DNA of 53,239 nt from Octopus bimaculoides (lineage: Eukaryota). Shown here one piece after another: positions 6,401-29,300 of the stretch (positions are counted from its first letter, which is position 1; every line of letters starts with the position of its first letter). The DNA is taken from positions 39,065,942-39,119,180 of the forward strand of contig NC_068986.1 in the NCBI RefSeq assembly GCF_001194135.2, in the 5' to 3' direction. The translations under genes and the position numbers were made by a program. The notes beneath the pieces are model-generated. The model saw nothing but the letters and a program-made list of their open reading frames with translations. It did not search any database and was not told where the DNA came from.

Positions 6401-8657
6401 ACACACATGGGTGCATTTTGCAAAGTTTACAGCTTTGATGCTTGAAGTAACCAAGTTAAGTTTAATTTAAGAGTTAGAGACTCATAGTCTGCCTCTTGGT
6501 TTTGTCAAATCTGTGGGGAAAAGAAAATAAGGACACCATTTTGTAAGGATCCTTTTAATATTACTAAACTACAGCAGTTATCTTAAGCGTTTTCCCTTGC
6601 ATTCAATTTTTTTTTTAATGTTAAATATTTTTTGTCATACCTTTTAAAGCTACTGGGACAACAGGATGCATTTTAGAAATTATTTTTTCCCCTGTTTACA
6701 AACCAAAAATGTTTTTTCTAAAAAGGTCACTAGTCGATCCAATATATATATTTTTTTCACATGACAGCAAAATAAAGTTTGAGAACTGAACCTCACAAAA
6801 ACGTTCTTCAATTTTTTTTTTCTTTCCTATTGAGGCCATGAATATTTCAGTTACTTTATGTTGCATCAAGAAACTGGTACCTTAAGTATCCAATAATTCA
6901 GCATTTAAGACAATAGAATTTAAGATGCTTGATCATAAAAAGGTGAGAAAAGTTCATCCAATGATATGTTTTACAAACATATCATAATTATGTAAAATGG
7001 CTTATTTACCTTAAATTGATATAGTTTCATCAAATGTCAGTCACTAAATTCTATTGGGAAGCTGATTTGTCAATCTGGTATAGGAAACTGAATTGCACTT
7101 GTTTTTGGTGCAAATCAAGATAAAGAATGATTGCTTATTTGAAGCAAGTGTGTTTATTGTCATTTGTTTTAATGTTATATTAGTCTAGTCAGCATCTGAT
7201 GCAATATCAACTGTGAATTATAAAAGTTTATGGAATATGATTTTGCAGCCATCAATTGGCTGTTGGTCACAAGTTGGTGCATAGTTAGGCTAATAAATCA
7301 GTTTTTGTTTTGTAGGAACAGATATAAGTCTATATTTCCTCCCTACCAAGTAGTGCTAACGAGACTTGACAGACAAACCTGAATATATCAATTAGAACTG
7401 AAATCATTAAGCACTTTGTCCCAGCTGTCTGATTTTAAAAATGTAAAGTAAAGCAACTCACAAAGACAAATATTTAGTTCTAGTAGATAGAAGTGGAAAT
7501 AGGACAATAATGAAATTATCGAAGAAATTAAAAGAAAATAACAACAAAAAAAATCAAATCATATATAATGAACACAAAATAAAAGGCATTATGTGCATCC
7601 TGTTAAGTCCAACATTATATGTTGTAGATACATGAAGACAGAGTGAGAAATTAAAAATAATAAAAAAATAAGATGTCATGGTAGCTAACTAGACCTACAC
7701 ATGATTTTAAGATAAATCTAGTTAAAACTGGATACAAAGTAACTTGCCATGAAAACTCACTTATTTTTTGCAATCAGGAATAATTCAATATGATCTAAAG
7801 AGCATCAGGTTTAGTTGGGATAAAAAATAAAAAGGAAAGAGCACAATATATTCAGTGATTGTGTTTTCTGATTTGTTCTGTTTTTTGAAACCAAGCGTCC
7901 ATAGACCAGGCCCACGTCTGGCAAGGGCACCTTTCAAGTTTCCCATCTAATGACTTAATCCATAGTAACATTAGGGTTACGTTAGAAACTCAAATAAGTC
8001 CTTTGTTTAAGAGAACATCTGCGGTTGGAGGTGAATTCTGTTATTGGTATAATGTTTATCATTTAAAACAGATTTTTCAAAAGAGAGAGAGCAAGTGGGG
8101 CTGGAAAAAAAAAAAAAAAAGTTTTTTTTCAGTAATACTTTCAGGTGCCTGAAAAGTTGGTTAATTATTTCAAGAGGCAGTACTTGCTTAATAACTATTG
8201 ACTGCCCTCGCAGCGGAAGCTCGCAGTGATAGCCAAGTCTCATTATCACCACTCGATCATGGCTGCTGTTGTCGTAGTCGTAGTACTAATAGTAGTAGCA
8301 CAGCCCATCTTGCATATCGTAGTCACTGACACAGGCATCATCATTCTTTGTTNNNNNNNNNNNNNNNNNNNNNNNNNNNNNNNNNNNNNNNNNNNNNNNN
8401 NNNNNNNNNNNNNNNNNNNNNNNNNNNNNNNNNNNNNNNNNNNNNNNNNNNNNNNNNNNNNNNNNNNNNNNNNNNNNNNNNNNNNNNNNNNNNNNNNNNN
8501 NNNNNNNNNNNNNNNNNNNNNNNNNNNNNNNNNNNNNNNNNNNNNNNNNNNNNNNNNNNNNNNNNNNNNNNNNNNNNNNNNNNNNNNNNNNNNNNNNNNN
8601 NNNNNNNNNNNNNNNNNNNNNNNNNNNNNNNNNNNNNNNNNNNNNNNNNNNNNNNNN
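3430..8657 (-). other. Putative terminal exon / long 3' UTR of FAM120A
   Basis: Polypyrimidine tract at 8660-8685 (minus) runs into the N gap; no recognisable repeats; U-rich on the minus strand; AATAAA (minus) at 3450-3455 with a downstream U-rich element. Confidence 0.5.
8353..8657. other. Assembly gap (other gaps: 11973-11982, 15625-15726, 26200-26329, 43435-43669)
   Basis: Runs of N. Confidence 1.
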
Positions 8658-10619: not shown

Positions 10620-13600
10620 CTGGTATAATAGAAAATACAAAAATTAGAACAGAACAAAACAAAAATCAATACAAATACACACACACACATATATATTGGG
10701 TTGTCCGGAAAGTTTGTGCCGATTTATAATAGCTTACCTTTCGACTTATTTGCCATGAAACCACCTCAATTCTGGGAAGAGGGTGTTCATATTTGGTTGA
10801 TTAAAAATGTAATGGCAAGTATTTGACCTTTTTCTTTCCTTTAAAAATCGGCACGAACTTTCTGGACAACCCAATATATAAAGTTTTAAGAATCTCATCA
10901 TTTGGTTTGAGCTTCCCAGGTCTATCTCACAATTTCGCCACCCCAACTGGTTTTCATACAATTCTTTCATATTTGCTTAAACAATTATTTAGTATCCACT
11001 GCATGTAATATATCTATCTTCTAGCTATTTTCTCATGTTCCTTGAATTTTTTCAAATTTACTTAACACAGTTGCAAGATCTAAGTTTCAATGAATCTAAA
11101 ATTACAAGTTTGTAACACACATTAGGTACAATAACAGAATTTTGATTCCAGAGTCACACAGTTTTAATTGATTGCCAACGCCATAACTGTTTAGCCTGTT
11201 TTTTTTTTCACCAGAGTGCACTACAAAATGCTGAAAGAAAGCCAACAAGGAACAGATTCATGTTAAAAAAAAAACAAACTATAAATCAACTTCAATGAAT
11301 GAGGTTATCACAATTGAATATTATAAATTTTAAAATTGAAGTTACATCACTAAATTTAGGATAACCAAATTGAGTACTTACTCTCCTGAAATTTCAACAG
11401 TGCAGCCTCTTCCACGGACAATAGCAACTGCACCAGTTCCTCGAGCATTTCTTGGTTTACTTCCTGGCCTTGGACGAGCTCTCAATGGACGCCTGGTAGG
11501 AGGTCGGAAACCTCGACCCCTTGAAAAACGAGCCTCATTCTGATAGAAAGTGAAAAATAAAAAGTCAATACGCTGGCTTGTGTGAGATAGGATTCAAATA
11601 CAACAATACATAATCTACTTAAGTTTGACAAAAGGCTGTCAAGTGACATAAGATTAAATTTTTGCGTATTTGCTCATTGGAATAATTTTTTTTAATTGTA
11701 CAGTACAGACAGCACCAGCAAATCAAATAGTGTACAGTTACAATATGAAAAATTCAAAAAGACACTGTAAGATGGATAATTAATTTGAGGGACAAAGTCA
11801 ACTCCAGAAGATGGACAATGTCAACTCCACAGTCCAAACACTGTGCTCACAGAGAATCTAGTACTGTTTTGTATTTTAGCATTATGGGCATAAAAGTTGT
11901 TCTTTGTCAGATGTTACAAATCAGCTTAACCCTTTTGTTATATTTCTGTTGAAAGACTGCTTCTGTTTCAGTNNNNNNNNNNGGGGGGGGGGGGATCAAG
12001 TAAAATAACTTTGTTCCAAAGACCAGCTTAATAATCACATAACTGAAAAATCAGGATTCAGATTGTTTTAAAACAAGTTTGTATCATGGAACCAGCTGTA
12101 GTCCTAGGTGAATTGGTATCAAAAGGTTAAGAAAAAAAAAGCCTCAACAATAGGCAGAAGCGTGACTGTTAAGAAGCTTGCTTCCTAACCACATGGTCCT
12201 GGGTTCAGTTCCATTGCGTGGTACCTTAGGCAAGTGTTTTCTACTATAACCTCAGTCCGACCAAAGTCTTGAGTAGATTTGGGAGACGGAAACTGAAAGA
12301 AGCCAGTCATATACATTATATATATATATATATATGTATATATTTGTGTGTTTGTCCCTCCACCATCGCTTGACAACCGATGTTGGTGTGTTTACATCCC
12401 CATAACTTAGCGGTTCGGCAAAAGAGACTGATAGATTAAGTATCAGGCTTACAAAGAATAAGCCCAGGGTTCGATTTCTTTGACTAAAAGGCAGTGCTCC
12501 AGCATGGCCACAGTCACAATGACTGAAACAAGTAAAAGAATAAAAGATTGAAGAAGATTCAATGTTTCTTACTGATGGCCTTAATCCTCTCCCCATGCCA
12601 TAAAGTGCTGCTGAAGCTTTTCCTCGGATTGCTCTGTTTGATGCAACATTACGAGATACTCTGCAAAATAAAATTTTCACAAGAAATATATTTCAAAATT
12701 TATATTTTGTTAAATGTATTTATGTGTAAAAGTGTTTAAATTTGGCCAGTAATGCTCTGATCACCTATCTTAACAACTTTTCAGCTTTTACAACATGTTG
12801 TGGTTTAGTCCTAATTTGGCTTTATAATCAAAGGAAAAGTGCATCTAGGAATACATTAGCCAATGCATTCTTCCCAAACACAGGAGATTGAGTTATAAAG
12901 ATTCTTTTTGGCTCAAAATACAAGTAGATTTGTTTTGTGTGAATGTTTCTGTGAGATTACTGTTATTCTTTTAGATAGTTGGATATTTCTTACACAAAGT
13001 TAAGGACTTGTCTTGATAAAGATCTATCAACCTCTAAATATTTTGTCCATTAAAAAAAGTAAAGAAAAAAATGGACTAGCATCAACAATCTATCTAGAAA
13101 TATTTAAACAATGAAGAAAAAAAAACATTAACAATGACTAATATCTAACATTTTAATTAGTTCAGCAAGTATAAGGGATAACTCTAGGCATGTTTTGATC
13201 TTAATAAACCTCCTCAGCAAAGCATAGATTTTATTCATGCTGATGTGTCAGGGATATTTTGTAGATGAAAAACTTGTTTAACCCAGTGGAGTGCCAGATA
13301 TATGGTCAAATAAAGTTCCGGTGGTCAGGGCTCAAAGGGTTAATGAATAAAATATCTGATTAAGTTGCTTCATTATTTAAAAATTGTGAAATAAGTCTGC
13401 TTAGCAATCAATATAAGTACACTTTAGATATATTCAGTTAAAAGGTGCATGAAATTACAGTACCTTTTGCCTGGTCCTCCAACTGACATAACTTGTGGAG
13501 CCATGTTAGATGCACGGCCTCGGGCCGCACCATGAAGATTTGGTCCCCAACTGCCAACGACAACTCCGGCTATCTCCAACTGCCCACCACGAGCATCTAC

Positions 13601-16600
13601 AGGCGAACGACCTTAAAAAAACAAAACAAAAGGAAACAATTTTATTTCCATAAATCACTGTTCAAACTTACAATCAGCTAAAAGAAAAATGTCTTTTAAA
13701 AAATTTTTTCAGTTATTCTTTTTTTTTTCTCTTCTGATGAAGGAATAGTGTCCAAAAATGTCAAAACTGTTTCTGTTCTTTTGAAGTTCAATAGAAAAAA
13801 GGGTTTAAATTTCTCATAGAAAGAGCTATTTAGCTTCAACAATTCTAGTAATTTTGACATTGGTTTTGAAAAGGATATCTTGTTAAGATTATTTGCATAA
13901 ATTTAATTATAGCCATATGACCACCTGAGGGCAGTGATATCAAACAAAGTAAGTCAATCAATGTACCAGCAGCTGTCAATTGCAAAATCATGGCTTCAAA
14001 TAATCAATGATTAATAATTGCTATTACACTGATTAGGCAATTAGAATCCCAACTTATTGTCTCATTTGTTGGAAGGAGGGAAACAAACAAACTAACATGT
14101 CTACTTCATTAGAAAGCTATCTTATTATCAAAAATAAGATATTCAATAAACTGGGTAAAATTTCAAGGAAAAATGTCCTGCAAGCTGTTTATATGTTTCA
14201 GCCAGATTCCAACGATTGCTTATGCTGTGCCATGTAGCCACTATACCACATTCTTTAAATGCACCATACATGCTACCCCATAAGAAAAAATATAAAACTT
14301 ACCAAGGATGCCTCGTCCTCGACCTTTGTTCTGGTTCTGTCCACCAGCAGAAATATTTGGTTGAATTGGAGGGGCACCAGGAGGCCGATGATTGAAGTTA
14401 ACATTAGAGTAGGGTGGAAAAGGATAATTGGTGTAGAGAGCAGTAGCAGGTAATGGGGCTTTGGCAAATTCTACTTTCAGTCCTTCTAAAATTGCTTGTC
14501 TCATTCGTTCAACCTTCAGTACTTGATCAACCTAAAAATGCGAGAAAGAAGTGTGAGAAATTCCAACAAAAGAATATAAAATGGATTCATTTGGATTGAG
14601 GACTATTTCCTTTGTAACTGAAGTCATATTGAGACAAAAGTTAAACCAAGTTTATAAATTGGAATACGTAGTCAACACTTAGATATTTTTGAAAACAGAT
14701 TGAAAATAACAGTTATAATCTAGAGCTATAATGCAAGATGGAATAACATATTTACCTTTTGGCAAAAAGAAAGTAAGTTACTAATAGATTATACACGGGT
14801 ACAATATGAAAACACCTTGTTTTCAATAATGAGAAGGCTATGCTGAGCTATTTTACTGACATATACTAACAATTGGGCAAGTTACAAACAAGGTAATAAA
14901 CATAGTGTGTGTGTGTGTAACGAATGTTTTCTTACCTGTCCATCACACATATCAATGAGAGGAGTATTGTTATTTGCTTTCAGAAGTTTGAAATGAAAAA
15001 GTTTGCCATCAAAGTATAACCAGGGGCAACACATGGTCCATGGAATTGGAGCTCCACAAATATCATTGGCAAAAATGGCAGTTTCAATTCCAGCCATAAA
15101 AAGAGATGCTAAGTGAACTCCACGGTTACTGATAGATGGTAGCTGTGGGAAAGAAAACCAAAATATATTTGAGTCACTCCACATTGGAAGATACAAACCT
15201 GTAACCACAATATTCCAAGTAGGAGAAATTGAGTTCATTGATGCTTACTTGACGTGACATAGATCATGAAACAAAGAAAGTATACCTGCTGGTTGCTGCA
15301 TGTGAGAGTGTGCACTGTGAGAGGAAAAAAGCTTTGAGAATGTGCTTAAGGAGTTTGTTCTCTTTGGAAGTGTATTACAAAATGGGTAGAGATGGACTAT
15401 ATGTAAGCTGAACCTCTCCCCCCCTTATTTATTAATTTTTTTAACGGAATCCCACGTTTTAGGCTATGGAGATTCCGATTCTGAAAAAAATTTTTTTCAA
15501 AAATTTCAATCCCCCCACCAAACAGGCTATTTACATGCTAGAAATAACAGCCAAATCTCACAAAACTAGTGTTAGGGTTAGGGTAAGGGTCAGTTTAGAT
15601 TTACCCTGTGGATCTATATAAAAANNNNNNNNNNNNNNNNNNNNNNNNNNNNNNNNNNNNNNNNNNNNNNNNNNNNNNNNNNNNNNNNNNNNNNNNNNNN
15701 NNNNNNNNNNNNNNNNNNNNNNNNNNTTTTTCAGAATCGGAATCCCCATAGCCTAAAATGTGGGATTCCGTAAAAAAAAAAAAGGGGGGGGGAGGTTCAG
15801 ATTACATATAGTCCATCTAGACCACAAAATGTATTGGTACACTATCTATATGAACAAAAACTAGTTTCATAAGATATTTTACAGAAGTCCCATCATACAT
15901 ACTAAAGACAATTATTACAACTTGTATACATACACAATTAACTAAAAAGAAAACAGTCACCCAACTCATTACAATGTGAAAAACAGATGGGGCTGTGAAA
16001 CAAACCAACGTTATCAGTTTTACTATAATAGTGTAGGTTAATAATTCAGTTAGCTAACTCAACCCATGACTTTTTCCCCTTTAGCTTCATCTGACTCTTC
16101 CTGCACATCCAATGCATTTTATCTGATATATTTCCGTTTCACATACTGACTTTAATGCATAGATATATTTCTCATCAACAGTGCTGCACTGCTGTCATTA
16201 CTGATGCATTATCAATATGTAAATTCTAGCACAATTACTTGTCATATAGGATAATGACAATTGATGTAAGATTATGCTTTGCCAGTAAATAGAACAGTTT
16301 CACTTGGTATTCAGAAAGCATTTAGAAAACAAGACTCGTATAATCTTTCCTCAAGAAACCAGTTTTTGTCATTATGACATTAAAACTACTTTAAGAAAAA
16401 AAAACTGTTCAAATTCTCAAATGTCCATACAGTATTCATTTATAGTCTCATCTCTTCTCCTAATATTAAAAATAAATAAAAAGAAAAGCAAATAAAAAAC
16501 TCCTACCAAACTGTTTAAAAAAAATTAAATAGAGATCAAATGAAACTAAATCAGAAAGAAACAATTTGGAAAAAAAATAAAAAGAAAAAAAAGAAAAGAA

Positions 16601-19600
16601 AAACATACTTTTAGATCCTGCATGATCTGAATGTCATGGAGAAGAGGAGACACTGCCATTGCTAAGAAAGCATCCAATTCTTGCCTTTGTAGAATTCTAC
16701 CATTTTGTAAAATATACCTAGGAATGGTAAATAAATAAACAAACAAATAAATAATAAAATAAGTTTCAAATTTTTGAATATCACATAAAAGAAGCAGATG
16801 AGTCATTCATGTGATATGAATAGCTAAGCCAGGACAAGAGAATGGGAAGTTCCTGCTGCTGATACTGCTGCATGCTAGAAAGGCAGTTAATGTTACAGGT
16901 GAGGGCAGAACTTGAGGTGTGAGCAAAGATAATAGAGAGACAATGTATTGAACAATATATATGTTAATGTAATGTGAGAAAAATATGCTCCAATGTTCAA
17001 ATGATGGTAATATAGATATTTTCCTCATACTCTTAATATGACAGATATTAATGGAAACTAATCATTCTAAATAAGTCAACCTGAAAATGCTTCTTTAACA
17101 GGTACAAGAATTGCTGTGTGGTTAAGAAGCTTACTTTGTTATATAATTTCAGGTTAAGTTTCACTGCATGGCACCTTGGGCGTCTTCTACTATAGCCCTG
17201 GCCTGACCAATGTGAGTCTGTAGGTGTTTGTTTCCTCTTCACCACCTGACAACTGGTGTTGGTTTGTTTACATCCTTGTAACTTACAGTTTCAGTAAAAA
17301 AAACAAAAAACAAACCAATAGAATAAGCACAAGACTTAAAATGTACTGGGGTTAATTTGTTCAACTAAACCCTTCAAAGTAGTGCCCCAGCATGTCTACA
17401 GTGCAATGACTGGAACAAGTAAAAAATAAATGAATAGTGTTACCAAAAAGATGAAGAGAGAACCAAATAGAGACTTCCATTAATATTCTTCATATCAGAA
17501 TAAACAAGAACCCACTAAGATTTTACTGTTTTAAATAAAAACGACAAAGTACCTGTGAACACAACACATAAGCAGTAAATGTTGTGGAACATAATTTGTG
17601 TTTAGCATCAAAGGAGTATCACTTTTAAGACAGGTAAGGAATGCTCTTAATCGTCTGTTTTTGTCATCAGCTTGCTGGCCTAGCCACAAACGCTCAATAC
17701 TTGGAGTTTTCCAGTCAACCGGATGTGCAACAACATATTCACAGTGTGGACTAAACACGCCTTTGCGGACTACCCATTCTTTGACACAGACCTCGAAGGA
17801 TTTGGAAGACTGGTCACCTGAAGAACAATGAAAAACAAGTTTATATTGTCATTAGGGAAAGGATATATGATAATGCAAAACCATGTCTAAGAACTATGGT
17901 TATAGACTACCAAGTTTGTTTTTCTGTGTCTTAAATGGTAGTGATAAACAAGAACAAAATAATAATTACTTCTTTGTTTAAATTAAGAGACAAGAAAAAA
18001 TAGTTCAGGCCATAACATAAATGTAACTGCTTAATGTATTATTATTATTAATGAATGGATAAATGAAAAAACAATATGCAACTTGTGACATGAAAGTAAA
18101 CTTCCAAGAATATCAACATTGACAGGATCTGCACTCCACAAAAAAAAAGAAAAAAAAAAAAAAAGACACAATCACAAGGTTTTTAAAACCTTATAATACT
18201 GTTATAATAAAAAATAAAATTCATATCTATTTATAGTCAGACTTTTAGAATTTTGTTTATTTCAAAAGATTCATTGCATAAAATGAAATGAAAATAAAAA
18301 AATTTTCCAGCTGGATTCTGCATTTCCAGCATAATTTAAGTTCCTTTAATTTCTATGAAGAAAAATCAATGAATTTAAAGTAATAATCAACATATAGTTC
18401 TTTTACCCCACAAAATCAAGCAGCACAAGTTATTATATAACATGACCATATATTATTTGCTAATAAATTGTGAATTATGTTACACTATTTAAATAAAGGA
18501 GTAGAGTATATAGTACATTATAAAGACTAAAATATAGCTTACCTTTATCTTTACTTTGATTTTCGTGAATAATCTTTAGTTTATTTAAATTAAAAAGCAC
18601 AGAATAAAGAGTTTGCCTGACAGGCCGATATAGTTCCACATAAGAAATAAGGTCTCGACTGACATCCTCTTCCAAGCATACCTCTAATTTGACTTCACCC
18701 TAAAATAAGCAGATATTTTCATAATCAATCCTCAAAAGTAGGAGACAGTAATGAATAAAAAAAGAAAAGAAAAAAAAAAGAAAAAAGGGGTTTCAGTAAT
18801 ATTTACCTGAGATAATAACTGATACACCCAGGGACTCATTAAACCTTTCTGGTGTCTTTCACTGGCTATACGCATAATTTCAGGAGATATTTGGGGAAGT
18901 TTAAATTCTACATCATTCTGTGAATGCTCATTTTTTACACATTTGTTCAAATTCTATATGAAAAAGATAAGCAGAATGTATGCAAAAGCATGTACAATAT
19001 TATTACACTAAATCTTTTTACTGATCAGAGATAAGAAAAAAATTTTCAAATGTTACTCTTAACTCATTAGCATTCAGATTACTGTCAAATGTAATGCTTA
19101 TTTATTCATTGCTTTGAATTAATCACATGGCTTTGATGTGATTGTTTTCTGAAATGCATCAATTAATTTCAGTTTGTTGACGACATTTGATGCATACATT
19201 TTCTTTCCACTATTTTGTTTTACTATCCTCCACATCTGTTCTCTTGTGCAAACAACTTTAAATTTCATGTGTCACATTTCAACTGCTTTTCCTGAACAGC
19301 TTTACATTCTCAAACTTCTTGACAGGCCTTTTTACCCTGTCTATTAAGAAACCCCAAAGATAATTTCTGAGCAGTTTTAATAGCAAGCTGCTTGTACTAG
19401 AGTTTGGTATTTAAATTAAATTATTATAACATGTGATTCTAATTGGTGAACACCAGCATAATTTACAAACCACTTCAAAGCCTTCACTTTATTGAAATGC
19501 TAAGCCAGCCTACTCGTGAAAATTATAAATCATGAAAAGATTGAAATTAAAATGGGGAAAAAAAAAAAAAAAAAAAAAAAACTTATTCACACATAAACCT

Positions 19601-22600
19601 AACATATTGAACATTATTTAAAGATTGAGAATATTGAAATAACATTACTTGCGGAAACTTTTGAGTCCATGTGTCATCATTTCTCTTAGAATCACCTGAA
19701 ATAAATACATCAAAATATCAACAATAGTGAATAAGATACATACCTCCAATTTCCCATACAAAGGAGTCACCTGAAACTGCAATTTTTAGAAACAGACTGC
19801 AAGACCTGGCTATAAGATGACTTGCATTTTTTTTTGTTCATCCATCTAAGCATATTACTCATGTCTATGCCTCTGAGCTCAATCTCTTCCTGATGAATCT
19901 CCCTCCACTCTCACAACTAATCTTCTTCACATCCAACCTTCCATCACCACTGACTATGGCACAATTCACTCAGCTGTTGTTATTGTGGGAGTAGAACTGC
20001 ACATATTTCATCCTCCTACCACAACTCCTCCCTGAAACCACTTTTTTCTCATGCATTCTCAATATCATCCCTTACCCCCTTATTTTCCAAACACCCCTTC
20101 TATTTCCCCTTTCCCCAATACATCACTACATTTTGTCAATGGCAGCCCTCCTTCCCATCACCTCAAATCATCTACTGTTCTGACCTCTACCTCTGAACAG
20201 GCCAACCCATGCCAGCTTAGAATATGACGATGCGTATATAGTAATTTGCATCAGGTCATTGACACAATATTTCATTAACTCACCAAATGAAAATGAAATT
20301 TAGCTAATAGAAACCATTTGGCATAAAATGAACAGGAATAAAATAGAAACATACCAGACTGATTGGCATCAAAGTCATGCATGTTCTGATTGGGTGGGTC
20401 AACAACAATTTGCGGGTTAGCATTATCAACATATCCAGAGGTTTCCTGAAGAGAAAATTTTCATATTAGACATGGCTTTGCAAATGTTTTTAAGCAATCT
20501 GAATCTTAATCGTAGCAATGAAACAAACTTAGAGTAATATATAATTTAGCTGAAAGAAATCTTAAACGTTTCTTAACTCTGGCTATATTTCTTTAGTAAT
20601 AATCTAACAAACTGAAAGAACACTTTATTGGTGATGACATAATTAGAGAGAAAAACCTCTTCATCATTTTAATACCGACCCGGCTGCAGCAGACTGAAAT
20701 TTTTTTCGTTCAAACAACCAACCTGGCTGTAGCTGGCCGAGCGTACCCATTGTTATCTAAATGCAAATTTGAACACAAATCTTGTTAGTACATTCGTGAA
20801 AACACATAATTTCACTTTGAAAATAGTTGAGTTAGTATTTGACATGATATCTGAACTCAGTGAATTTTTGGAGATTTTCTTCCACATTTTTTCTGTGTTG
20901 ATTTATTTCAACTTTGAAAATGGATAGGAGTTTCATGCTATCAAGCAGTGATTTCAAATTTTAAAGTTTTTTAACGGAAGATATGGAGATATTGAGAATG
21001 AATCGGGTATTTCTGTATCTGAAACTGAAAGTAGCGATTCTGAAGAAACTAAAAGCAGTGATAGTGACAGCAAGTATTATGTCATGAATACAATTCATGA
21101 AATTGAACCAGTATTTACATGTGAGAGACACTAGCAGTACCCCAGTAAGTGGAGAACCAAACTTTGATCCCTTATTTAAAATAAGACCCCCCCCCCTCAT
21201 CGACTGCGTTCAAAATGCATATAAAACACTTTACAACCCTGACAGATCCTTATCCGTTGATGAAAGTATGGTGGGGCATAAAGGAAGGGTACACTTCCGA
21301 CAGTATATGCCAGGAAAGCCCACAAAGTGGGAGATCAAAGTTTGGGAAATTTGCAAAGCAAATACTAGGTACTGCTGTGGGTTTAGTTTTTATACTGGGG
21401 AAAGAGACAATAATGTTAGTCAGCATGGCCTAGGGTATGATGTGGTCTGGAATTTATCACTTCCATACCATAAGCAGGGCCGTATATTATTTTTTGACCA
21501 ATTTTTTTGTTTGGTCAAACTCGCAGTGGATTTAGAAGCTGTGACAATGTCTACACGTGCTACAGTAATTGCTCGTAGAAAAGGGCTGCTGTTGGATATA
21601 AAAAAAGCAAAATTAAAAAAAAAAGAGGTGAAATAATCCAATGGCAGAAAGGAAATCTGTTGGCGACCACATACAGAGATAAGAAGCAGATAAATTTTCT
21701 ATCTACTGGTGCACAGCCATGTGTAGATGAAAATGGCACCGTTTGCGAACCTCGATTATAACAGGTACATGGGCGGTGTGGATTGGCCGAACCAAGTGAT
21801 GGGTAATCTGATTGGTAGACCAGGTAGTAAGTGGTGGCAATACCTGGTTTGGTATAGAGTAAACATGAGCATTGTAAATGCACTTATATACCAAATCAGG
21901 AGGGGCTCATTTTCTATGGTGAAGTTTAAAATATATTTTTATATTTTGCTCAGTTTACCTGTATTTACCCATAATTAGAGTCACTTTGAGATAAAAGTTA
22001 TGCAATAGAATTGAAAAAGAACTCTTTCTTCAATTATGTCCCCAAAATCACAATATGTTGATAAGTAAAAAAGTTACAATTGTTTAATGAAACTAGTCTA
22101 AATTCATGATTATTTTAGAATTTAATTGAAACTCATGAGGAGTGTATTTTGGTCAGAAATATAGTAACAAAAGGGTTAATATCTAGGTGTAAAAAAATGA
22201 GTTGTGTTAGGGAAAGTAGGATGTTCTAGGTACAACATAGCAAAATGTTACTTGTTCCAACTGTGAAAAAACTAACTTTAAACAGCTTTAATTACATACC
22301 ATATAGAATTAAGTCTTCAATTACCTGACTATAGTTTTAACTGATGTCAAGTTTATCACATAGTTTATAGATTTGAAAATTTAATCTTTAAGACAATATA
22401 TCTTAAAATGTTCATACAATTAGCCAACTACTAATCAGAATATTTAATAAATTAATTTAAATACATTAAAAACTTACACTTGTATCAGATTTATTTTGGC
22501 CATTTTGAAGATAGCTGCCAGTTTGTTGTGGAAGACCATTTACTAAAGAAAATGAAATAATGAAAAAACATCAAAGAATGACCACACTCTTCCTCTCCAA

Positions 22601-25600
22601 TATCACTGATTCAAAAAGTTGTACAAGCAGTATTTTATAAAAGAATTACAATTAACCATATAATATATTAAGCTGGATTAGATTTTATTGATTTTAAAAG
22701 CTCTATATCTAATATAGGTAAGGGCATGTAGCTCAGTGGTTAGGATGTTGGATTCGTGATCACAAGATTGTGGTTTTGATCCTTGGACCAGGTCATGCAT
22801 TGCATTCTTGAGCAAAGCATTTTATCTCATGCTGCTTGGATCACTTTGATACCATGCATCTGTACTGGTAATGTTGATTTGATGGAAAGAGAGAGCAAAT
22901 GCAGAGCACAAACATTTGATCACTATAAACAAATCATCTGCACAGGTTGTTCAGCAAGAAATTGCAGAACCCTCATCTGTTATCTATGATGGGAAAGTCC
23001 ACAATATCTAAGAAGTGTGTATGTATGTATGTATATATATATATATATATATATAAAATCACCTTTTGTTTTTAAAAGTAAACTCAAAATTTCATACCTT
23101 TAGGTTATAATGGTGTTCATAACTCAAGAGTTTATCAAATAACTGTATCAAAATGAATCAGTTATAATATATTGATTTCTAAGGTCACAATTTTGGGGAG
23201 AAGTTATAAGCTAAAAGTGCATCAAGACCATTTTCAAAATGCTATATCATTTTAGGAGTATTGTGAACTAAGAGTCAATATTTTGCATGCAAAGACTAAG
23301 GTCCAAACAAAGTTATGTCTGTCTGAAAACTGCACTAGCACAGGTTCAGATTAGGATTATTTCAAGGCGAAACTGCCAATGTTCCCAATGAAATCTAGTC
23401 TATTAACTCTCCAACCTGATTCCATGACTTTAGGATGTGGGGTATTATTGAGAACAAAAAACAAAACAACTGCGTTTACAGCCCTTCTTACCACTAGCTA
23501 TTCAGCTGTAGGTACATAACTCGTTTAACATTTAGTCAAGCAAACACTGGAGCGAGTAGAATTACCTTGTTCAAGGGCACAACACAAAGTTAATATTAAG
23601 TTCTGATTTTATGATGGTACCCTAACAAACACAACCTTACAGCCATTTTACTTCTCAAATCAAAGAATAGGCAGCACTCACTTTTTACTCTGGGTTTATA
23701 TTTCAGGAAACCATCTTGAGTACCATTTAAATAGTACTGGACACTTTGTTTCAATTTTGTAATAAGTTCTTGTTTATTTTTAACAGAGTCTCTGAAAAAA
23801 TAAACACAAATGAAAATAACAAAGACGTCTTATTTTTCAATTTTAAAATGCTTTCAAAGCAACTGTTGCTTTAAGAGAAAAAAGAAAAAAAAAAATTGCA
23901 ATCTATAACTATCCACAGTTCAAAGCCTATATCTGTAATGAACTAAATAAATAATTTTTCAAATACTAAATTTCATGTTAAATGATCATTAAAAATATAC
24001 TCTTAAATGTTTTGCTAGATATAAGCTAAAGGAAATTCTACACTAAAACAAGAAACATTCCAATAATATGAGTACTATATTACTTGCTGTGAGGATTTAT
24101 GGACACAGGTATATAAACACTTTATAGATGCATCATCATTATCGTTTAACGTCCGCTTTCCATGCTAGCATGGGTTGGATGATTTGACTGAGGACTGGCA
24201 AACCAGATAGCTGCACCAGACTTAATCTAGTCTGGCAGAGTTTCTACAGCTGGATGCCCTTCCTAACGCCAGCCACTCCAAGAGTGTAGTGGGTGCTTTT
24301 ACTTGCCAGCCAGGCGGTACTGGTACAACTTAAGAAATTTGTGCACAGTGAAATGAAATATAGTTCAATTTAATCATTCTTTTAGTGTTTTCTATAATTT
24401 TTCTTTGTAGAGTATTATCACAGCCCCACCAGTTTAATATGCAAATTAATATATGTAGTGATGAACAATATCTTATGTTATATAGGTGTTTTCTTTTACA
24501 TATAAGTGTTATTACCATGGTCCCTACTCAAATAAATCAAAACATTTACTGCACCTATCTCCTTTATATTCTCTGCTTTGCCTGTCAAGAACCTCTTATA
24601 AGCAAAAACATACAAATTGCAACAGCCTAACCACCTCTTAAATTCTTCTTTCTGTTAAGCTTCAAGAACTTACATGACAACAAAATCAATAGATACCCAA
24701 ACAGATCCAGAAAGATACAATTATATGCTTCCAGTGATACAGCATTTACAATAACAATAATTCAAAACATGCATAAAGAATATTTAAGTATAAAACTGAT
24801 ACACTGCTTCATTTAGTATATCATTTTCAATGTTAACATAAGTTGCAATAATAAAAATACAGACTTCCCCCTCTTTCAAATCATACTAAGTCAGCAAATT
24901 ATTTTAAAATTCTTGAGAAGACATACATCAGCTCACAGTAATTTAATAAGGGAACTGAAGCAAATAAGATTCTTCAAGTGTTTAATATTTATTTATTTAG
25001 TTATTTATGCGTTTGAGCCAAGTGGCTGTGGTCATGCTGGAGCACCACCATGAGGTTCCCATGCCGGGAATCGAACCCAGGCCGCCTGGGTGAAAAAAAT
25101 ATGGAACGCTTCACGAATTTGCATGGGGACAAAACTATAGAAAAATTCAACGTATAAATATCTCTTTAATATTTAGATCTCTGAGGATTACTGCAAAACT
25201 AAAGAAAATCTTTCAATTTATGTAAGCAAGGAAGATTTTTTTTTTTTAATTGTACAATAAGAAGATTAACTAGATCATGTGCTTAAAAGACTAATCCCCA
25301 AACAAAATAAAACACTTTCTTCTAACATATTTTATCAGTGACAAAACATATACACATTCAAGACACCATGAAAAAATCTTAAGAGAAACTTTAAGAAACC
25401 TATCTAAATGTCAGTAAAGATAAAAAATGAAGTAAGTCATTTTCAAAATGTATACCAGAGGCATCTAATCAGCACAGATTTGACAGAAAGCTATTGCATA
25501 ATCTTCAGAATCATCCATTTTCTTTTAGATTCAAAGGACTTTTCAACATAGGTGTTAGACTACTCACAAAATGCATTTTCAGAGATGAATGCTTGTGTAG

Positions 25601-26329
25601 GACCAGCCACACGTTTTGGAATAATGCACATTGTTCAGTCAGGAAGTGCTCTTGCTTAACCCTTTAGCATTCAGATTACTGTCAAATTGAAATGCTTATT
25701 TATCCATATTGTTTTGAATTAATTGGGGCATTATCTCATAACCGAGGTTTCAATGATATGGTTGTTCACTTTTAGAATGACATTGTACGGTAGATGTGAG
25801 AGGCCGAACCTGGCCAATTTGAAAAGAAGACAGGTAGGATATTTGAGCCAGTTCAAATGTTAATCATCATCATTGTTTAACGTCTGCTTTCCATGCTGGC
25901 ATGGGTTGGACGGTTTGACCGAGGACTGGCAAGCCAGATGGCTGCAGTAGGCTCCAATCTGATCTGGCAGAGTTTCTACAGCTGGATACCCTTCCTAATG
26001 CCAACCACTCCGAGAGTGTAGTGGGTACTTTTACGTGCCACTGGCACGAACTTCCCAAGTCTATCAATTTTACCAGATCTCAAAGGATTTGTTCCCTCAC
26101 TTCTCCACTGACAAGAGGTAGGATCTGAACTCAGAAAGCAAAACAGGATGAGATGTTGCAAGGCATTTTGTATGACATTACAAATGGTCGACCAATCAAN
26201 NNNNNNNNNNNNNNNNNNNNNNNNNNNNNNNNNNNNNNNNNNNNNNNNNNNNNNNNNNNNNNNNNNNNNNNNNNNNNNNNNNNNNNNNNNNNNNNNNNNN
26301 NNNNNNNNNNNNNNNNNNNNNNNNNNNNN

Positions 26330-26388
<59 letters not shown>

Positions 26389-29300
26389 TACTTGTCTGTT
26401 TAATATTCATTTTCCATGTTAGTATAGGTTTGGATGGAGATACATTTAAGGCAGGACTATATGGCTGGATGGTTCGCATGTCACCAATCCACACCACTTT
26501 TTGAGGTAAGAGGCTTTCAAAGCATAGAGTGACCGGTCACAAAGTCAACATCAGTACAACTTCATTTAAGTGGTGTTGGGTGTGGAATATAGAAACACTG
26601 ATGCATAAATATGCATCAGTGTTTCTATAAAGTACATGTGCATCCTACAGTTTCTATCATCCAAATTCCCTGACATAGCATTGGTTGGACCAGGGCTACA
26701 GACAATACCCAAGGTGTATTTTAATAAAATGTATATGATGAATTACAGTCAATTCTATAAACTGTTGAAGCATCAATTCTATTGGTAACATCAATTGACT
26801 TAGAGGTTATAATGTAATTCCTATGACAGGAAAGAAAATGAGTCAAAAGCATATCACTTTAACCAACCAACCCATCCACATTTCTGAACTTTTAAAACAT
26901 ATCTATTACATGAAACTTTCAAATACTTTATTAAATATTGCATCCACATTAACTTGCAAAGAAACAATTAGATATGTGAGTATAAAGCTTCATGAATGAA
27001 ATGCCACAGGAGCAAGGCACACAAGGAGATACCATATGGAAAACTTATCAAATTCAAACCAACAGAGGGTGGAAGTGATGATGTTGAAAATTATAACATA
27101 GACAATGAGAACATTCAGTTTCAGCTTTTCTATTCTCACTCCTAGCCACATCTTAATGAAACCTTAAATGAATCGTCTGGGCTTAAATTGGATATATCAA
27201 TAGCTGGTCTGTATTTGCCTAGGGTTAAACTAAATGTTAATAGGTCAGGCTCTCTATGCTGCTGGCACTACATAACCTGAACAATTTGTCTCATGTTTGG
27301 GTGATCAGTGACTAAACTGATCTCCATATCTGGAAGGATGAAGGACACCACCAGGTAATTTGGAACACTTATTTGAAAATGCATTGCTGTGCAGGTTCCG
27401 CCTTCCAGGCTATAGATTTTAAATATAACCTTATGATATTTGAATAAGTTAGTTAACATGAAGATAAACGTATCCACTGTAAATCTGTTTCTTATTTAAA
27501 ATTCAATTCTTAAACAAAAAACACATTGTTGAAGACATGCAAGTTGATTTACAAATGAAACATTTAATTACAATAAAACAAAAGATTTGTAAAAGCAAAG
27601 CTGAAATTTAAAAATTCATTCATGACTTGTAAGTAAAATAAAATATCACTATCTACTTACTTGAAAATTTCCTCCCCAATGACATCCAAATTTTCAACAG
27701 AAGGTAGTTTTCTAACAAAGTCAACAACAGCTTTGATCACTTTTTCTGGTGTTAACTACGAAGAGAAGGAAAAAGTGTGAACATGACTAAACTAAACAAT
27801 TTAGAATAAATGAATAGCTAACTTAACTAGTCTGTTATAGAAACAAGAAATAATTAAGTTTAGAATACTTTTTTACAGAAGTTTCATTGCAGTAAGCAGA
27901 GTTATCTGAAGAAAAAAAAATTTAACTGGACTAGCTTACATTCATTGAAGTAACAAGTATGCCAGTAGAATAAAATGTCAATGGTTTTAGAAAATTAGAC
28001 TTTAGTAATTGTATTAACTGAAAGCTTGTAATCAAGTTTCAATGGTCTAACTACGGTTACACATAAAGTAACAAAATGATTTCCACAACTGACTTAAAAC
28101 TCATCGTTTAGAAATTCACACTAAACTACAGAACATATAGTCAGTAATAAACCTAGACAATAGGGTCAGCAATGCACACAATATACAGAAGATTTTTTAA
28201 ATAATTACATTCAAAGGAGTACTATAACTCAGTAACTCATGTTCAAAAAGTTGGGAGAATGTACCTGACAAACTAACCTGATGGACTCTCCAAGCTTTAC
28301 ATACAAATGAACAAGTTAAAGAGCAAGCCTTAGTATGATTGAACAACTGCTAGGAATAGCAAGTCAAAAATAGAATATCTTTAACCATTGGTCTGCTTGA
28401 TCAAGACTTAGCTGGGAGTTCAACTCAATGAAACAACCTAATTATGAAGGATACTTGTTCAGAGCAATTCATTACATGGTTCAAAACTTGAGTCAGGTTG
28501 ATTGGGTTAATCATAATTATTTGCCAGGGACACATCAATGTTAGGATACAAATTAGTTATTTACAAAGCTGGTATCCTAATGACAAACCAGCCCAAATTC
28601 TAATTAAACTACTGACTGTGTTTATCATTGTCAATATTTGGTAGATAGGCTGGCGTAATTGGTTAGCACTTATCGTGAATATAAGAGGTGTAGGTTCAAT
28701 TCCCATGCATACTAATACCCACTTTTTTTCTGTTGGGGGCTTATATGCCCCAATATTAGACTATTTTCTTCAGCCAATACATGGTGATTGCTTATAAGCT
28801 TTAATGGTGATGAGCTGGGAGAATTGTTAGCACACTGGGTGAAATGCTTAGCGGTATTTCATCCATATTTACATTCCGAGTTCAAATTCTGCCATGGTCA
28901 ACTTTACCTTCATCCGTTTGGGGTCGATAAAATAAGTCTCAGTCAAGTACTGGGATTGATGCAATCAACTTACTTCCTCCCCCGATAATTCTGGCCTTGT
29001 GTTAAAATTTGAAATCATTATTGCCAATGTCAAAAGCAAAACTTGAACATTTGAAGATAATTTAATATGAAATAAAATAGTCAATGCTTCACCTTTGTGG
29101 GTCTTCCTTCTGTGGCTTTATAGACTTCATCTTTGAAAAAGTCAACTAAATCCTCATCAGGAAGTATATGATTTCCTGAAAGGAAAGAAAAAAAAAAATA
29201 CAAAACTCATGGAATGTATACCTTGTTTCTTGAATGTTATCTTCCCTGATCCAATACCTTTCCCCATAGCTACCCTAACATGTATAAAAAAAAATTTTTT

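What the first reader, a model, noticed from the sequence alone, without database searches (positions are those of the whole stretch)
24981..25175. Tripartite retrocopy: U6 3' end + tRNA-Glu(UUC) 3' half ending in CC + LINE/SINE tail, a possible fossil of serial RNA ligation
Seen on the minus strand, in order: GCAAATTCGTGAAGCGTTCCATA (U6 3' end, 25122-25100); T7 (25099-25093, shared by the U6 U-tail and the UUC anticodon loop); CACCCAGGCGGCCTGGGTTCGATTCCCGGCATGGGAA (tRNA-Glu 3' half); CC; TCATGGTGGTGCTCCAGCATGACCACAGCCA...AAAC; (TAAA)n. The tRNA piece begins inside the anticodon loop and ends in CC, as expected for a cleaved mature (CCA-added) tRNA rather than a tRNA gene. Established: mature U6 ends in a 2',3'-cyclic phosphate, tRNA halves carry 5'-OH or cyclic-phosphate ends, and RtcB-mediated ligation of U6 precedes human U6/L1 chimera retrotransposition. 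Inference: two ligation events (U6 to tRNA half, tRNA-CC to a LINE/SINE 3' fragment) made one RNA that the LINE machinery copied. That would be direct genomic evidence of U6-tRNA-half ligation in a mollusc germline, or the founding or member copy of an undescribed U6/tRNA composite SINE. An 11-bp direct repeat TTTAATATTTA (24981-24991 and 25165-25175) may be the target duplication, which would add a fourth, 42-nt piece of unknown origin (25123-25164).
Basis: partly seen in the sequence, partly recalled or inferred. Interest (0 to 1): 0.85.

Follow-up and report, generated by a model that had tools for sequence, protein, structure and literature searches.

The report
U6–tRNA-Glu half–SINE tail chimeric retrocopy
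A 135-base insert in a mollusc intron joins the last 31 bases of U6 snRNA, the 3' half of tRNA-Glu and a SINE-type tail; it is most likely a one-off by-product of LINE reverse transcription, a rare example of a known kind of chimera and not proof of RNA ligation.

Summary
On the minus strand, with no filler between pieces, lie:
- the last 31 nt of U6 (25126-25096);
- a T7 run shared with the tRNA anticodon loop;
- a tRNA-Glu(UUC) 3' half (to 25056, 39/43 identical to the human Glu-TTC 3' fragment, CC included);
- a ~43-nt two-hairpin tail and a (TAAA)n-like end.

New here: the tail is 76% and 66% identical to the 3' end of a ~390-bp SINE present twice in the window, with compensatory changes in the hairpins. 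So the LINE that mobilises that tail type made the copy.

U6 chimeras with 5'-truncated U6 and short stringent-LINE or SINE tails are published, as are tripartite chimeras and tRNA-half/L1 chimeras. I favour serial template jumps, because both junctions have 1-4 nt of ambiguity. Prior RNA ligation cannot be excluded. Nor can a pre-existing tRNA-Glu-headed SINE that merely picked up U6.

The 11-bp target duplication is not significant. The internal T7 and the missing A box argue against a U6/tRNA composite SINE.

No cephalopod genome was reachable, so copy number and the empty site remain untested. Interest is moderate to low.

The parts
25165..25175 (-). Candidate 5' copy of a target-site duplication (TAAATATTAAA)
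   Evidence: Read directly. Not significant: 63 of 300 shuffles reach the score. About 3% of AT-only 11-mers recur within 100-300 bp.
25127..25164 (-). 38-nt AT-rich stretch of unassigned origin: part of the insert only if the 11-bp duplication is real, otherwise plain flank
   Evidence: No match to U6, tRNA or the SINE. Its 3' 15 nt (25144-25130) repeat 25208-25194 at 14/15 identity; 1 of 300 shuffles reaches that.
25100..25126 (-). U6 snRNA 3' end, about nt 77-103 (CATGCAAATTCGTGAAGCGTTCCATA)
   Evidence: Rfam U6 model positions 75-105 align here. The 23-mer is unique, with 0 expected by chance. The single mismatch is a CpG->TpG.
25093..25099 (-). T7 run: U6 oligo-U tail plus U(32)33-35 of the tRNA-Glu anticodon loop; junction ambiguous by up to 4 nt; also a Pol III terminator
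   Evidence: The human Glu-TTC fragment begins UUUUCAC. The Rfam U6 consensus ends UUUUU.
25056..25092 (-). tRNA-Glu(UUC) 3' half, from C36 to discriminator A73
   Evidence: Unique 37-mer. 39/43 identical to the human Glu-TTC 3'-tRF when the T-run and CC are included. Correct tRNA geometry in ARAGORN once a modelled 5' half is added.
25054..25055 (-). CC: remnant of the post-transcriptional CCA end, or partly tail or microhomology
   Evidence: The SINE tail aligns as CT.A.GG against the element's C-CTCATGG, so one C is ambiguous.
25011..25053 (-). SINE/LINE-type 3' tail core with two hairpins (TCATGGTGGTGCTCCAGCATGACCACAGCCACTTGGCTCAAAC)
   Evidence: 32/42 and 27/41 identical to the 3' ends of the two SINE copies. 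Consensus structure has 13 pairs, 3 of them with compensatory changes. The 23-mer core matches 12493-12515 with 3 mismatches, 0 expected.
24992..25010 (-). A-rich simple-repeat end, (TAAA)n-like
   Evidence: TRF period 4, 5.8 copies, 24986-25008.
24981..24991 (-). Candidate 3' copy of the target-site duplication, overlapping the last tail repeat
12153..12545 (+). Comparator: ~390-bp SINE copy a (tRNA-like head, internal TA/TG microsatellite, 3' module ending in the related tail)
   Evidence: Its antisense ORF matches stray SINE ORFs in public data.
17098..17433 (+). Comparator: SINE copy b (older, lacks the microsatellite segment), same tail

Best explanation
This is a dead-on-arrival chimeric retrocopy, sitting in the sense orientation in an intron of a FAM120-like gene.

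Proposed steps:
1. A LINE reverse transcriptase of the 'stringent' type recognises the two-hairpin 3' tail that the window's abundant SINE also carries. It started target-primed reverse transcription on an RNA with that tail and a (TAAA)n end, and copied about 60 nt.
2. It jumped to the 3' CC(A) end of a mature tRNA-Glu(UUC) and copied it back to the U-run of the anticodon loop.
3. The A-run at the cDNA tip paired with the oligo-U 3' end of U6 snRNA. The enzyme copied the last ~31 nt of U6.
4. The cDNA was then joined to the chromosome.

The product has no promoter and an internal T7 terminator, so it is inert.

Shown: the identity, order, orientation and exact abutment of the three pieces; entry into tRNA and U6 at their native 3' ends; tail homology and conserved tail structure.

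Inferred: that it was a single event; which enzyme did it; the order of synthesis; and that the joins were template jumps and not prior RNA ligation.

I put about 0.8 on 'LINE-made chimeric retrocopy containing a U6 3' fragment' and about 0.45 on this specific double-jump version.
For: - The pieces and junctions are as described.
- The tail is homologous to the 3' end of a SINE present twice in the window. Identity is 76% and 66%, against 83% between the two SINE copies.
- It keeps both hairpins through 3 compensatory pair changes, so it is a working tail variant and not a decayed copy.
- It ends in a period-4 A-rich repeat.
- Both upstream RNAs are entered at their natural 3' termini. Both junctions are ambiguous: up to 4 T at U6/tRNA, 1-2 C at tRNA/tail.
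- Moldovan et al. describe 1-3 nt microhomology as typical of RT template-switch products.
- Published precedents:
  - Platypus U6-L2 chimeras almost all have 5'-truncated U6 upstream of a short L2 tail that ends in a simple repeat, with TSDs of only 1-9 bp.
  - U6-Mon-1, U6-AnolisSINE2 and U6-RTESINE1 chimeras also exist.
  - Tripartite chimeras have been ascribed to double jumps.
- The U6 and tRNA parts carry only about 1-2 CpG-type changes, consistent with a single insertion age.
Against: - One DNA copy cannot separate template jumps from copying a pre-ligated RNA.
- No second copy, empty orthologous site or species tRNA-Glu gene could be examined, so 'single event' and 'mature tRNA' are inferences.
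- The tRNA-CC-tail unit looks exactly like a simple tRNA-derived SINE. Octopus genomes are reported to hold more than 1,300 SINE families, most of them unclassified.
- No clear target-site duplication bounds the insert.
- mcm5s2U34 is not known to me as a strong RT block, so the stop in the anticodon loop rests on the microhomology argument.
Confidence: 0.45

Rival explanations
1. Bipartite, not tripartite. A simple SINE already existed, made of a tRNA-Glu head, CC(A) and this ~60-nt LINE-type tail. One of its transcripts was reverse transcribed only as far as the anticodon-loop U-run. The RT then jumped to the U6 3' end, or U6 had been ligated on. Only the U6 junction is specific to this locus.
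For: - A tRNA head plus a LINE-derived tail is the canonical SINE architecture.
- The tail belongs to a SINE tail family present in the window.
- O. vulgaris is reported to have 1,317 SINE families, 1,279 of them unclassified, covering 11.7% of the genome.
- U6 chimeras with 5'-truncated SINEs (Mon-1, AnolisSINE2, RTESINE1) are known.
- A microhomology-driven jump to the U6 U-tail would pick the only U-run in the unit, whichever RNA supplied it.
- From my own recollection of Ohshima and Okada: many tRNA-derived SINE heads retain CCA.
Against: - The tRNA part is 39/43 identical to a human tRNA fragment, closer to a real tRNA than most SINE heads are.
- No other copy of the tRNA-tail junction or of this tail variant is in the 53-kb window.
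- Six-frame translation searches found nothing, but the database holds almost no cephalopod DNA, so this is nearly uninformative.
Confidence: 0.25
2. An RtcB-type ligase joined U6 (2',3'-cyclic phosphate end) to a 5'-OH tRNA-Glu 3' half, and joined a CC>p-ended tRNA to a 5'-OH tail fragment. The LINE enzyme then copied the finished RNA in one pass.
For: - RtcB ligates U6>p to 5'-OH RNAs of several kinds, and such chimeras retrotranspose in human cells.
- tRNA 3' halves carry a 5'-OH, and RtcB's natural substrates are tRNA halves.
- CC-ended tRNAs with a cyclic phosphate arise under arsenite stress.
- tRNA halves are found in L1 chimeras.
- The U6 end is intact, with at least 3-4 U.
Against: - It needs two rare ligations on one molecule. 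The second needs an unusual CC>p end and a tail fragment cut at the right place.
- Both junctions are ambiguous by 1-4 nt, which ligation does not predict.
- An RNase A-type cut in this loop would be expected at C36/A37, yet C36 is retained (the enzyme preference is from general knowledge).
- Nothing in the DNA specifically demands ligation.
Confidence: 0.18
3. A member or founder of a multi-copy U6/tRNA composite SINE family.
For: - An snRNA-headed 'SINE/U' class is listed in the O. vulgaris repeat annotation.
- A multi-copy element is more likely to be met by chance in any one window than a one-off.
Against: - A T7 run in the sense strand would terminate Pol III in mid-element.
- Only a B box is present, with no A box.
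- Only the last 31 nt of U6 are present, and U6 promoters are external (Pol III rules from general knowledge).
- There is no second copy in the window.
- Known SINEU heads are U1 or U2, not U6.
Confidence: 0.04
4. Two or more separate events: an old U6 pseudogene fragment next to which a tRNA-SINE retrocopy later landed, or several cDNA fragments captured at a repaired double-strand break.
For: - No convincing duplication flanks the whole unit.
- A 15-nt local repeat just 5' of the U6 piece hints at untidy repair.
Against: - The pieces abut exactly at the natural U6 3' end.
- All three have the same orientation, with no filler.
- The arrangement is the standard one for single-event U6 chimeras.
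Confidence: 0.05
5. An assembly chimera in a draft scaffold.
For: The window has five N gaps; the nearest is at 26200-26329.
Against: - The element lies in ungapped sequence about 1 kb from the nearest gap.
- The junctions fall at biologically meaningful RNA ends, which misassembly would not produce.
Confidence: 0.02

Closest known systems
U6 chimeras with stringent LINEs and their SINEs: platypus U6-L2 and U6-Mon-1, Anolis U6-AnolisSINE2, opossum U6-RTESINE1 (Doucet et al. 2015, PMC4476161)
   Same: A 5'-truncated U6 that ends in its own U-tract is fused to a short LINE/SINE 3' tail ending in a simple repeat. Target duplications are small or unclear. The authors ascribe them to the LINE RT switching templates.
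   Different: Here a tRNA-Glu 3' half lies between U6 and the tail. The host is a mollusc. The LINE partner is unidentified.
Human U6/L1 chimeric pseudogenes (Buzdin 2002/2003; Moldovan et al. 2019, PMC6789731)
   Same: The U6 3' end is fused directly to a 5'-truncated retroelement in the same orientation. The debate between ligation and template switching is the same.
   Different: Human cases usually have full-length U6, a poly(A) tail and clear 7-20 bp TSDs. Here U6 is cut to 31 nt and the tail is a structured SINE-type tail.
Tripartite chimeric retrogenes (Gogvadze et al. 2007, PMC2104539)
   Same: Three different transcripts are fused head to tail in one retrocopy. This is interpreted as double template jumps during LINE reverse transcription.
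   Different: The components differ (WEIRD, Mg-SINE and MGL in a fungus; a few mammalian cases). The fungal case has an exact 14-bp TSD, which this locus lacks.
tRNA-half/LINE-1 chimeric insertions in primates (bioRxiv 10.1101/2025.02.02.635956)
   Same: A half-length tRNA with a breakpoint in the anticodon-loop region is fused to a LINE-type sequence in one insertion.
   Different: Those are mostly 5' halves (nt 1-37) in antisense orientation, explained by twin priming. Here it is a 3' half in sense orientation with CC, and with U6 on its 5' side.
Simple tRNA-derived SINEs with a LINE-derived tail (Ohshima and Okada; Gilbert and Labuda model of tail acquisition)
   Same: A tRNA-related part is followed by a LINE-type structured tail and a simple repeat. 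Tail capture by template switching is the proposed origin of such SINEs.
   Different: This copy has no 5' tRNA half (no A box), carries a foreign U6 fragment and an internal terminator, and no family is documented.

Membership tests
U6/LINE-or-SINE chimeric retropseudogene | U6 sequence ending in its native 3' U-tract, fused directly to the downstream part | tested here: met
   Rfam U6 model positions 75-105 end in the T-run that abuts the tRNA part.
U6/LINE-or-SINE chimeric retropseudogene | Downstream part in the same orientation, ending in the 3' tail of a LINE or its SINE | tested here: met
   The tail is homologous to the SINE 3' end, with hairpins kept and a period-4 A-rich end.
U6/LINE-or-SINE chimeric retropseudogene | The whole unit is flanked by a target-site duplication | tested here: inconclusive
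   An 11-bp repeat is present but not significant, and no repeat abuts the U6 start. Stringent-LINE chimeras often have TSDs of only 1-9 bp.
U6/LINE-or-SINE chimeric retropseudogene | Insertion absent from the orthologous site in relatives | not testable with these tools
   No cephalopod genome is in any reachable collection. The best match to the host gene's first exon is 81% identical, in a cluster with the bivalve Solemya velum.
Tripartite chimeric retrogene (double template jump) | Three unrelated transcripts fused directly in one orientation | tested here: met
   U6, tRNA-Glu and the SINE-type tail are contiguous on the minus strand.
Tripartite chimeric retrogene (double template jump) | Both junctions created in the same retrotransposition event | not testable with these tools
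   This needs a genome-wide count of copies that share the tRNA-tail junction.
tRNA-derived SINE | tRNA-related head with both A and B boxes (internal Pol III promoter) | tested here: not met
   Only the 3' half, with the B box GGTTCGATTCC, is present. ARAGORN finds no tRNA in the window.
tRNA-derived SINE | LINE-derived 3' tail | tested here: met
tRNA-derived SINE | Many dispersed copies | not testable with these tools
   There is one copy in 53 kb. The translation searches were empty but uninformative. The metagenome scan gave only chance bacterial matches.
   T7 sits in mid-element on the sense strand. There is no A box and no U6 5' part.
U6 snRNA gene | Full-length match at or above the Rfam gathering score | tested here: not met
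   15.1 bits against 44, covering only model positions 75-105.
tRNA gene | Complete cloverleaf | tested here: not met
   ARAGORN finds 0 genes and there is no Rfam gathering hit.
Product of RtcB-type ligation (Moldovan model) | The chimeric RNA exists before reverse transcription, joined at U6>p and a 5'-OH end | not testable with these tools
   This needs RNA data or biochemistry. The DNA junctions show 1-4 nt of ambiguity, which that study associated with RT switching.

The most novel reading that the evidence does not exclude
The locus is a germline fossil of RNA-level ligation in a cephalopod. U6 snRNA, with its 2',3'-cyclic phosphate end, was joined by an RtcB-type ligase to a 5'-OH tRNA-Glu(UUC) 3' half. 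The tRNA's trimmed CC>p end may likewise have been joined to a SINE/LINE tail fragment. The product was then retrotransposed. That would extend the U6-ligation pathway beyond mammals and to tRNA halves as partners.
Probability: 0.17. Interest if true: 0.65.

Novelty: new member of a known kind. Interest (0 to 1): 0.35.

Why it matters
If it is a one-off tripartite chimera, it shows three things about the retrotransposition machinery of a SINE-rich mollusc genome:
- It picks up U6 and mature tRNA just as vertebrate LINEs do.
- Multi-template cDNAs form outside mammals and fungi.
- A tRNA joined to a LINE tail, the presumed first step in SINE birth, can be caught in the act.

A genome-wide census of such U6 and tRNA chimeras in cephalopods could help decide between template jumping and RNA ligation. 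The useful measures would be junction microhomology, U-tail length and tRNA breakpoints. On its own, this single inert copy has no evident function and decides nothing.

Tried and rejected
1. Looking for other copies
   - The window holds none for the U6 piece, the tRNA piece or this tail variant.
   - Only the related SINE tails at 12.5 kb and 17.4 kb match.
2. Public DNA
   - Two viral-contig scans were empty.
   - The one metagenome scan gave three GC-rich bacterial chance matches.
3. Protein-space trick
   - I translated the element in all six frames and searched 5.8 billion predicted proteins. Nothing was found.
   - This proved uninformative, because the database has almost no cephalopod DNA.
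     - The abundant SINE's ORF hits only 12 representatives. The two I checked (P0121, P0123) come from ENA contigs of about 540 bp.
     - The host gene's exon has no hit above 81%.
4. Orthologous-intron route
   - The nearest homologues of the FAM120-like exon are distant molluscs (69-72% DNA identity in the exon), so their introns are not comparable.
5. Exact look-ups of three window ORFs found nothing on record.
6. Extending the U6 match further 5'
   - 'GTCCCC' against U6 'GGCCCC', with an internal deletion, did not convince me on inspection. The Rfam alignment does not extend there.
7. The 9-mer TTTGTCCCC
   - It is shared with the SINE's post-microsatellite region. BLAST finds no supporting similarity, so I treat it as chance.
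8. Whether the SINE's own T-arm-like segment (GGGTTCGATTT) shows that the tRNA-tail junction is ancestral
   - The spacing is similar, but the acceptor-strand region does not align. Secure homology starts only at GG(T/C)GGTGC.
   - The SINE copy gives no tRNA hit in Rfam.
9. A literature search for the SINE consensus string found nothing.
Full report
**What is there**

I read the minus strand from 25175 down to 24981. The pieces follow one another with no filler:

| Piece | Coordinates | Sequence or note |
|---|---|---|
| Candidate duplication, 5' copy | 25175-25165 | TAAATATTAAA |
| Unassigned AT-rich stretch, 38 nt | 25164-25127 | no match found |
| U6 3' end | 25126-25100 | CATGCAAATTCGTGAAGCGTTCCATA |
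| T7 run | 25099-25093 | shared by U6 and the tRNA |
| tRNA-Glu(UUC) 3' half | 25092-25056 | CACCCAGGCGGCCTGGGTTCGATTCCCGGCATGGGAA |
| CC | 25055-25054 | |
| Tail core | 25053-25011 | TCATGGTGGTGCTCCAGCATGACCACAGCCACTTGGCTCAAAC |
| A-rich period-4 repeat | 25010-24992 | |
| Candidate duplication, 3' copy | 24991-24981 | overlaps the last repeat unit |

The U6 23-mer and the tRNA 37-mer are each unique in the window, with none expected in shuffles.

**The U6 piece**
- Rfam's U6 model aligns its last 31 positions (75-105 of 105) to 25126-25096.
- The score (15.1 bits) is far below the gathering score only because the rest of U6 is missing.
- The single mismatch to the conserved sequence, CACG to CATG, is a CpG transition.

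**The tRNA piece**
- It is 39/43 identical to the published human Glu-TTC 3' fragment GUUUUCACCCAGGCGGCCCGGGUUCGACUCCCGGUGUGGGAACCA, CC included.
- It has the right geometry: a 5-nt anticodon-stem strand, a 4-nt variable loop, a 5-bp T stem, the TTCGATT loop, a 7-nt acceptor strand and discriminator A.
- ARAGORN calls it tRNA-Glu(ttc) once a modelled 5' half is attached. That test is partly circular.
- The window contains no complete tRNA or U6 gene.

**What the tail is**

This is the main addition to the finding.
- The core GTGCTCCAGCATG and its surroundings recur at 12494 and 17382.
- Both sites are the 3' ends of two copies of a ~390-bp SINE, at 12153-12545 and about 17098-17433 (both plus strand).
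- That SINE has a tRNA-like head at its far 5' end, an internal TA/TG microsatellite and a 3' module.
- Its antisense ORF matches stray ORFs in public data. From memory I recognise it as the very abundant octopus SINE. That identification is recollection, not a test. The only tool-based taxonomic pointer is that the best cluster for the host gene's first exon contains the bivalve Solemya velum at 81% identity.
- Over the ~42-nt core the element is 76% and 66% identical to the two SINE tails. The two SINE tails are 83% identical to each other.
- The three sequences share a two-hairpin consensus structure of 13 pairs. Three pairs are kept through changes on both sides, for example AGTCA/TGACT against AGCCA/TGGCT.
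- With only three sequences this is modest evidence. It fits a functional tail variant of the kind that 'stringent' LINE reverse transcriptases recognise.
- The LINE partner was not found in the window.

**Where homology with the SINE stops**
- It is secure from GG(T/C)GGTGCTCC onward and plausible from CT.A.GG.
- One of the two C after GGGAA could therefore belong to the tail or be junction microhomology.
- At least one C is unexplained by the tail and fits a CCA-added tRNA. I could not check what follows tRNA-Glu genes in this genome.
- The SINE also has a T-arm-like GGGTTCGATTT at a similar distance upstream of the core. The acceptor-strand region between them does not align, so I do not count this as evidence that the tRNA-tail junction is ancestral.

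**The junctions**
- U6 to tRNA: the T7 run can be split as 3-5 U from U6 plus 2-4 U from the anticodon loop. The human fragment begins UUUUCAC, and the Rfam U6 consensus ends UUUUU. The join is therefore ambiguous by up to 4 nt.
- tRNA to tail: ambiguous by 1-2 C.
- Both upstream RNAs are entered exactly at their natural 3' ends.

**The boundaries**
- The 11-bp repeat is real but unremarkable. In a local alignment of the two flanks, 63 of 300 shuffles reach its score.
- Only 0.16% of all 11-mers in the window recur within 100-300 bp, but 3% of AT-only 11-mers do.
- Its 3' copy overlaps the tail repeat, as expected for priming on an A/T-rich target. It may be genuine, but it cannot carry the claim of a fourth piece.
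- Nothing resembling a duplication abuts the U6 start.
- A 15-nt repeat, TTTTCT(T/A)TAGTTTTG at 25208-25194 and 25144-25130, lies just 5' of U6. One of 300 shuffles reaches its score. I cannot explain it.

**Context**
- A Solemya FAM120-like protein maps in exon-sized blocks along the minus strand. Residues 1-281 map to 49985-49125, 270-300 to 27752-27660 and 299-335 to 23796-23686, with further blocks down to 14373.
- The element therefore lies in an intron, in the sense orientation, about 1.2 kb upstream of the next exon.
- The window is a draft scaffold with five N gaps. The nearest is at 26200-26329.

**Mechanism**

The arrangement is the signature of LINE-made chimeric retrocopies: U6 3' end, then another RNA, then a LINE/SINE tail, all in one orientation.

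Closest precedents (Doucet et al. 2015):
- Almost all platypus U6-L2 chimeras have a 5'-truncated U6 upstream of a short L2 sequence that ends in a simple repeat, with TSDs of 1-9 bp.
- U6 also forms chimeras with the SINEs Mon-1, AnolisSINE2 and RTESINE1.

Other precedents:
- Tripartite chimeras have been ascribed to double template jumps.
- tRNA-half/L1 chimeras are described, though mostly 5' halves in antisense orientation.

I therefore read the locus as one target-primed reverse transcription. It began on a tail-bearing RNA, moved to the CC(A) end of tRNA-Glu, then moved from the anticodon-loop U-run to the U-tail of U6, and was truncated after 31 nt.

The U-run offers a simple reason for the breakpoint. 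After copying U35-U33, the cDNA ends in A3-4, which can pair with the U6 oligo-U end.

Ligation before copying remains possible:
- RtcB joins U6>p to various 5'-OH RNAs.
- tRNA 3' halves have a 5'-OH, and CC>p tRNAs exist under stress.
- However, it needs two rare ligations on one molecule and does not predict the junction overlaps.
- In Moldovan's assays, 1-3 nt microhomology marked RT-switch-like products.

The DNA alone cannot decide.

**The main rival**
- tRNA-Glu plus CC plus tail may already have been a small SINE, with only U6 added at this locus.
- This is a strong prior in a genome reported to hold over 1,300 SINE families covering about 12% of the DNA.
- The microhomology argument would explain the breakpoint equally well.
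- Against it stand the near-canonical tRNA sequence and the absence of another copy in 53 kb. Both are weak.

A U6/tRNA composite SINE is unlikely. The T7 would terminate Pol III in mid-element, there is no A box, and U6 promoters lie outside the 31 nt present.

**What could not be done**

No cephalopod genome is in any collection I could reach.
- The DNA scans returned nothing or bacterial chance hits.
- The six-frame translation searches were empty but uninformative.
- Exact ORF look-ups were empty.
- The nearest homologous loci are too distant for intron comparison.

Copy number, the empty site, the species' tRNA-Glu genes and the LINE partner all remain open. They are the decisive tests.

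**Verdict**

This is a real, non-chance, RNA-derived chimera. It is most likely an inert one-off retrocopy and a new member of the known class of U6-containing, LINE-made chimeric retropseudogenes, unusual in carrying a sense-oriented tRNA 3' half. It is not by itself evidence for RNA ligation. Interest is 0.35.

Noticed in passing
window 12153-12545 (+) and about 17098-17433 (+): Two copies of a ~390-bp SINE with a tRNA-like head, an internal TA/TG microsatellite and a 3' module. Copy b lacks about 70 nt including the microsatellite and carries an A-rich insertion. The 3' module has A-box-like (TTAGCGGTTCGG) and B-box-like (GGGTTCGATTT) motifs, as if it were a second, decayed tRNA-derived unit.
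   Followed up: partly
window 25130-25144 and 25194-25208: A 15-nt direct repeat (14/15 identical, spacing 64 nt) lies immediately 5' of the U6 fragment. One of 300 shuffles reaches its score. It could be untidy 5'-junction repair or a local AT-rich repeat.
   Followed up: partly
window 49985-14373 (-): A FAM120-like gene (constitutive coactivator of PPAR-gamma-like). Ten tblastn blocks to a Solemya velum protein map along the minus strand. The chimera lies in the intron between 27660 and 23796, in the sense orientation. Its tail contains AATAAA motifs that could act as cryptic polyadenylation signals.
   Followed up: partly
window 21097-21636 (+): A piggyBac-type transposase fragment (Pfam DDE_Tnp_1_7, E 1.6e-30), inside the same gene's intron.
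   Followed up: partly
window 43311-44084 (-), and 43180-43310 (-): An ORF remnant with a weak PHD/zinc-finger-like match, interrupted by an N gap. From the ORF stop onward a motif recurs three times: GATCGTTGCCAGTGCCCCTG twice exactly and once as a variant (GAGCGTTGCCAGTACCGCCTG). This may be the 3' end of a retroelement.
   Followed up: no
window 28640-28730 (+) and 28800-28895 (+): Two further tRNA-like SINE heads of other families, with B-box-like GGTTCAATTCC and GAGTTCAAATTC. They show how SINE-dense the region is.
   Followed up: no
window 8353-8657, 11973-11982, 15625-15726, 26200-26329, 43435-43669: Five runs of N, so the window comes from a gapped draft scaffold.
   Followed up: yes
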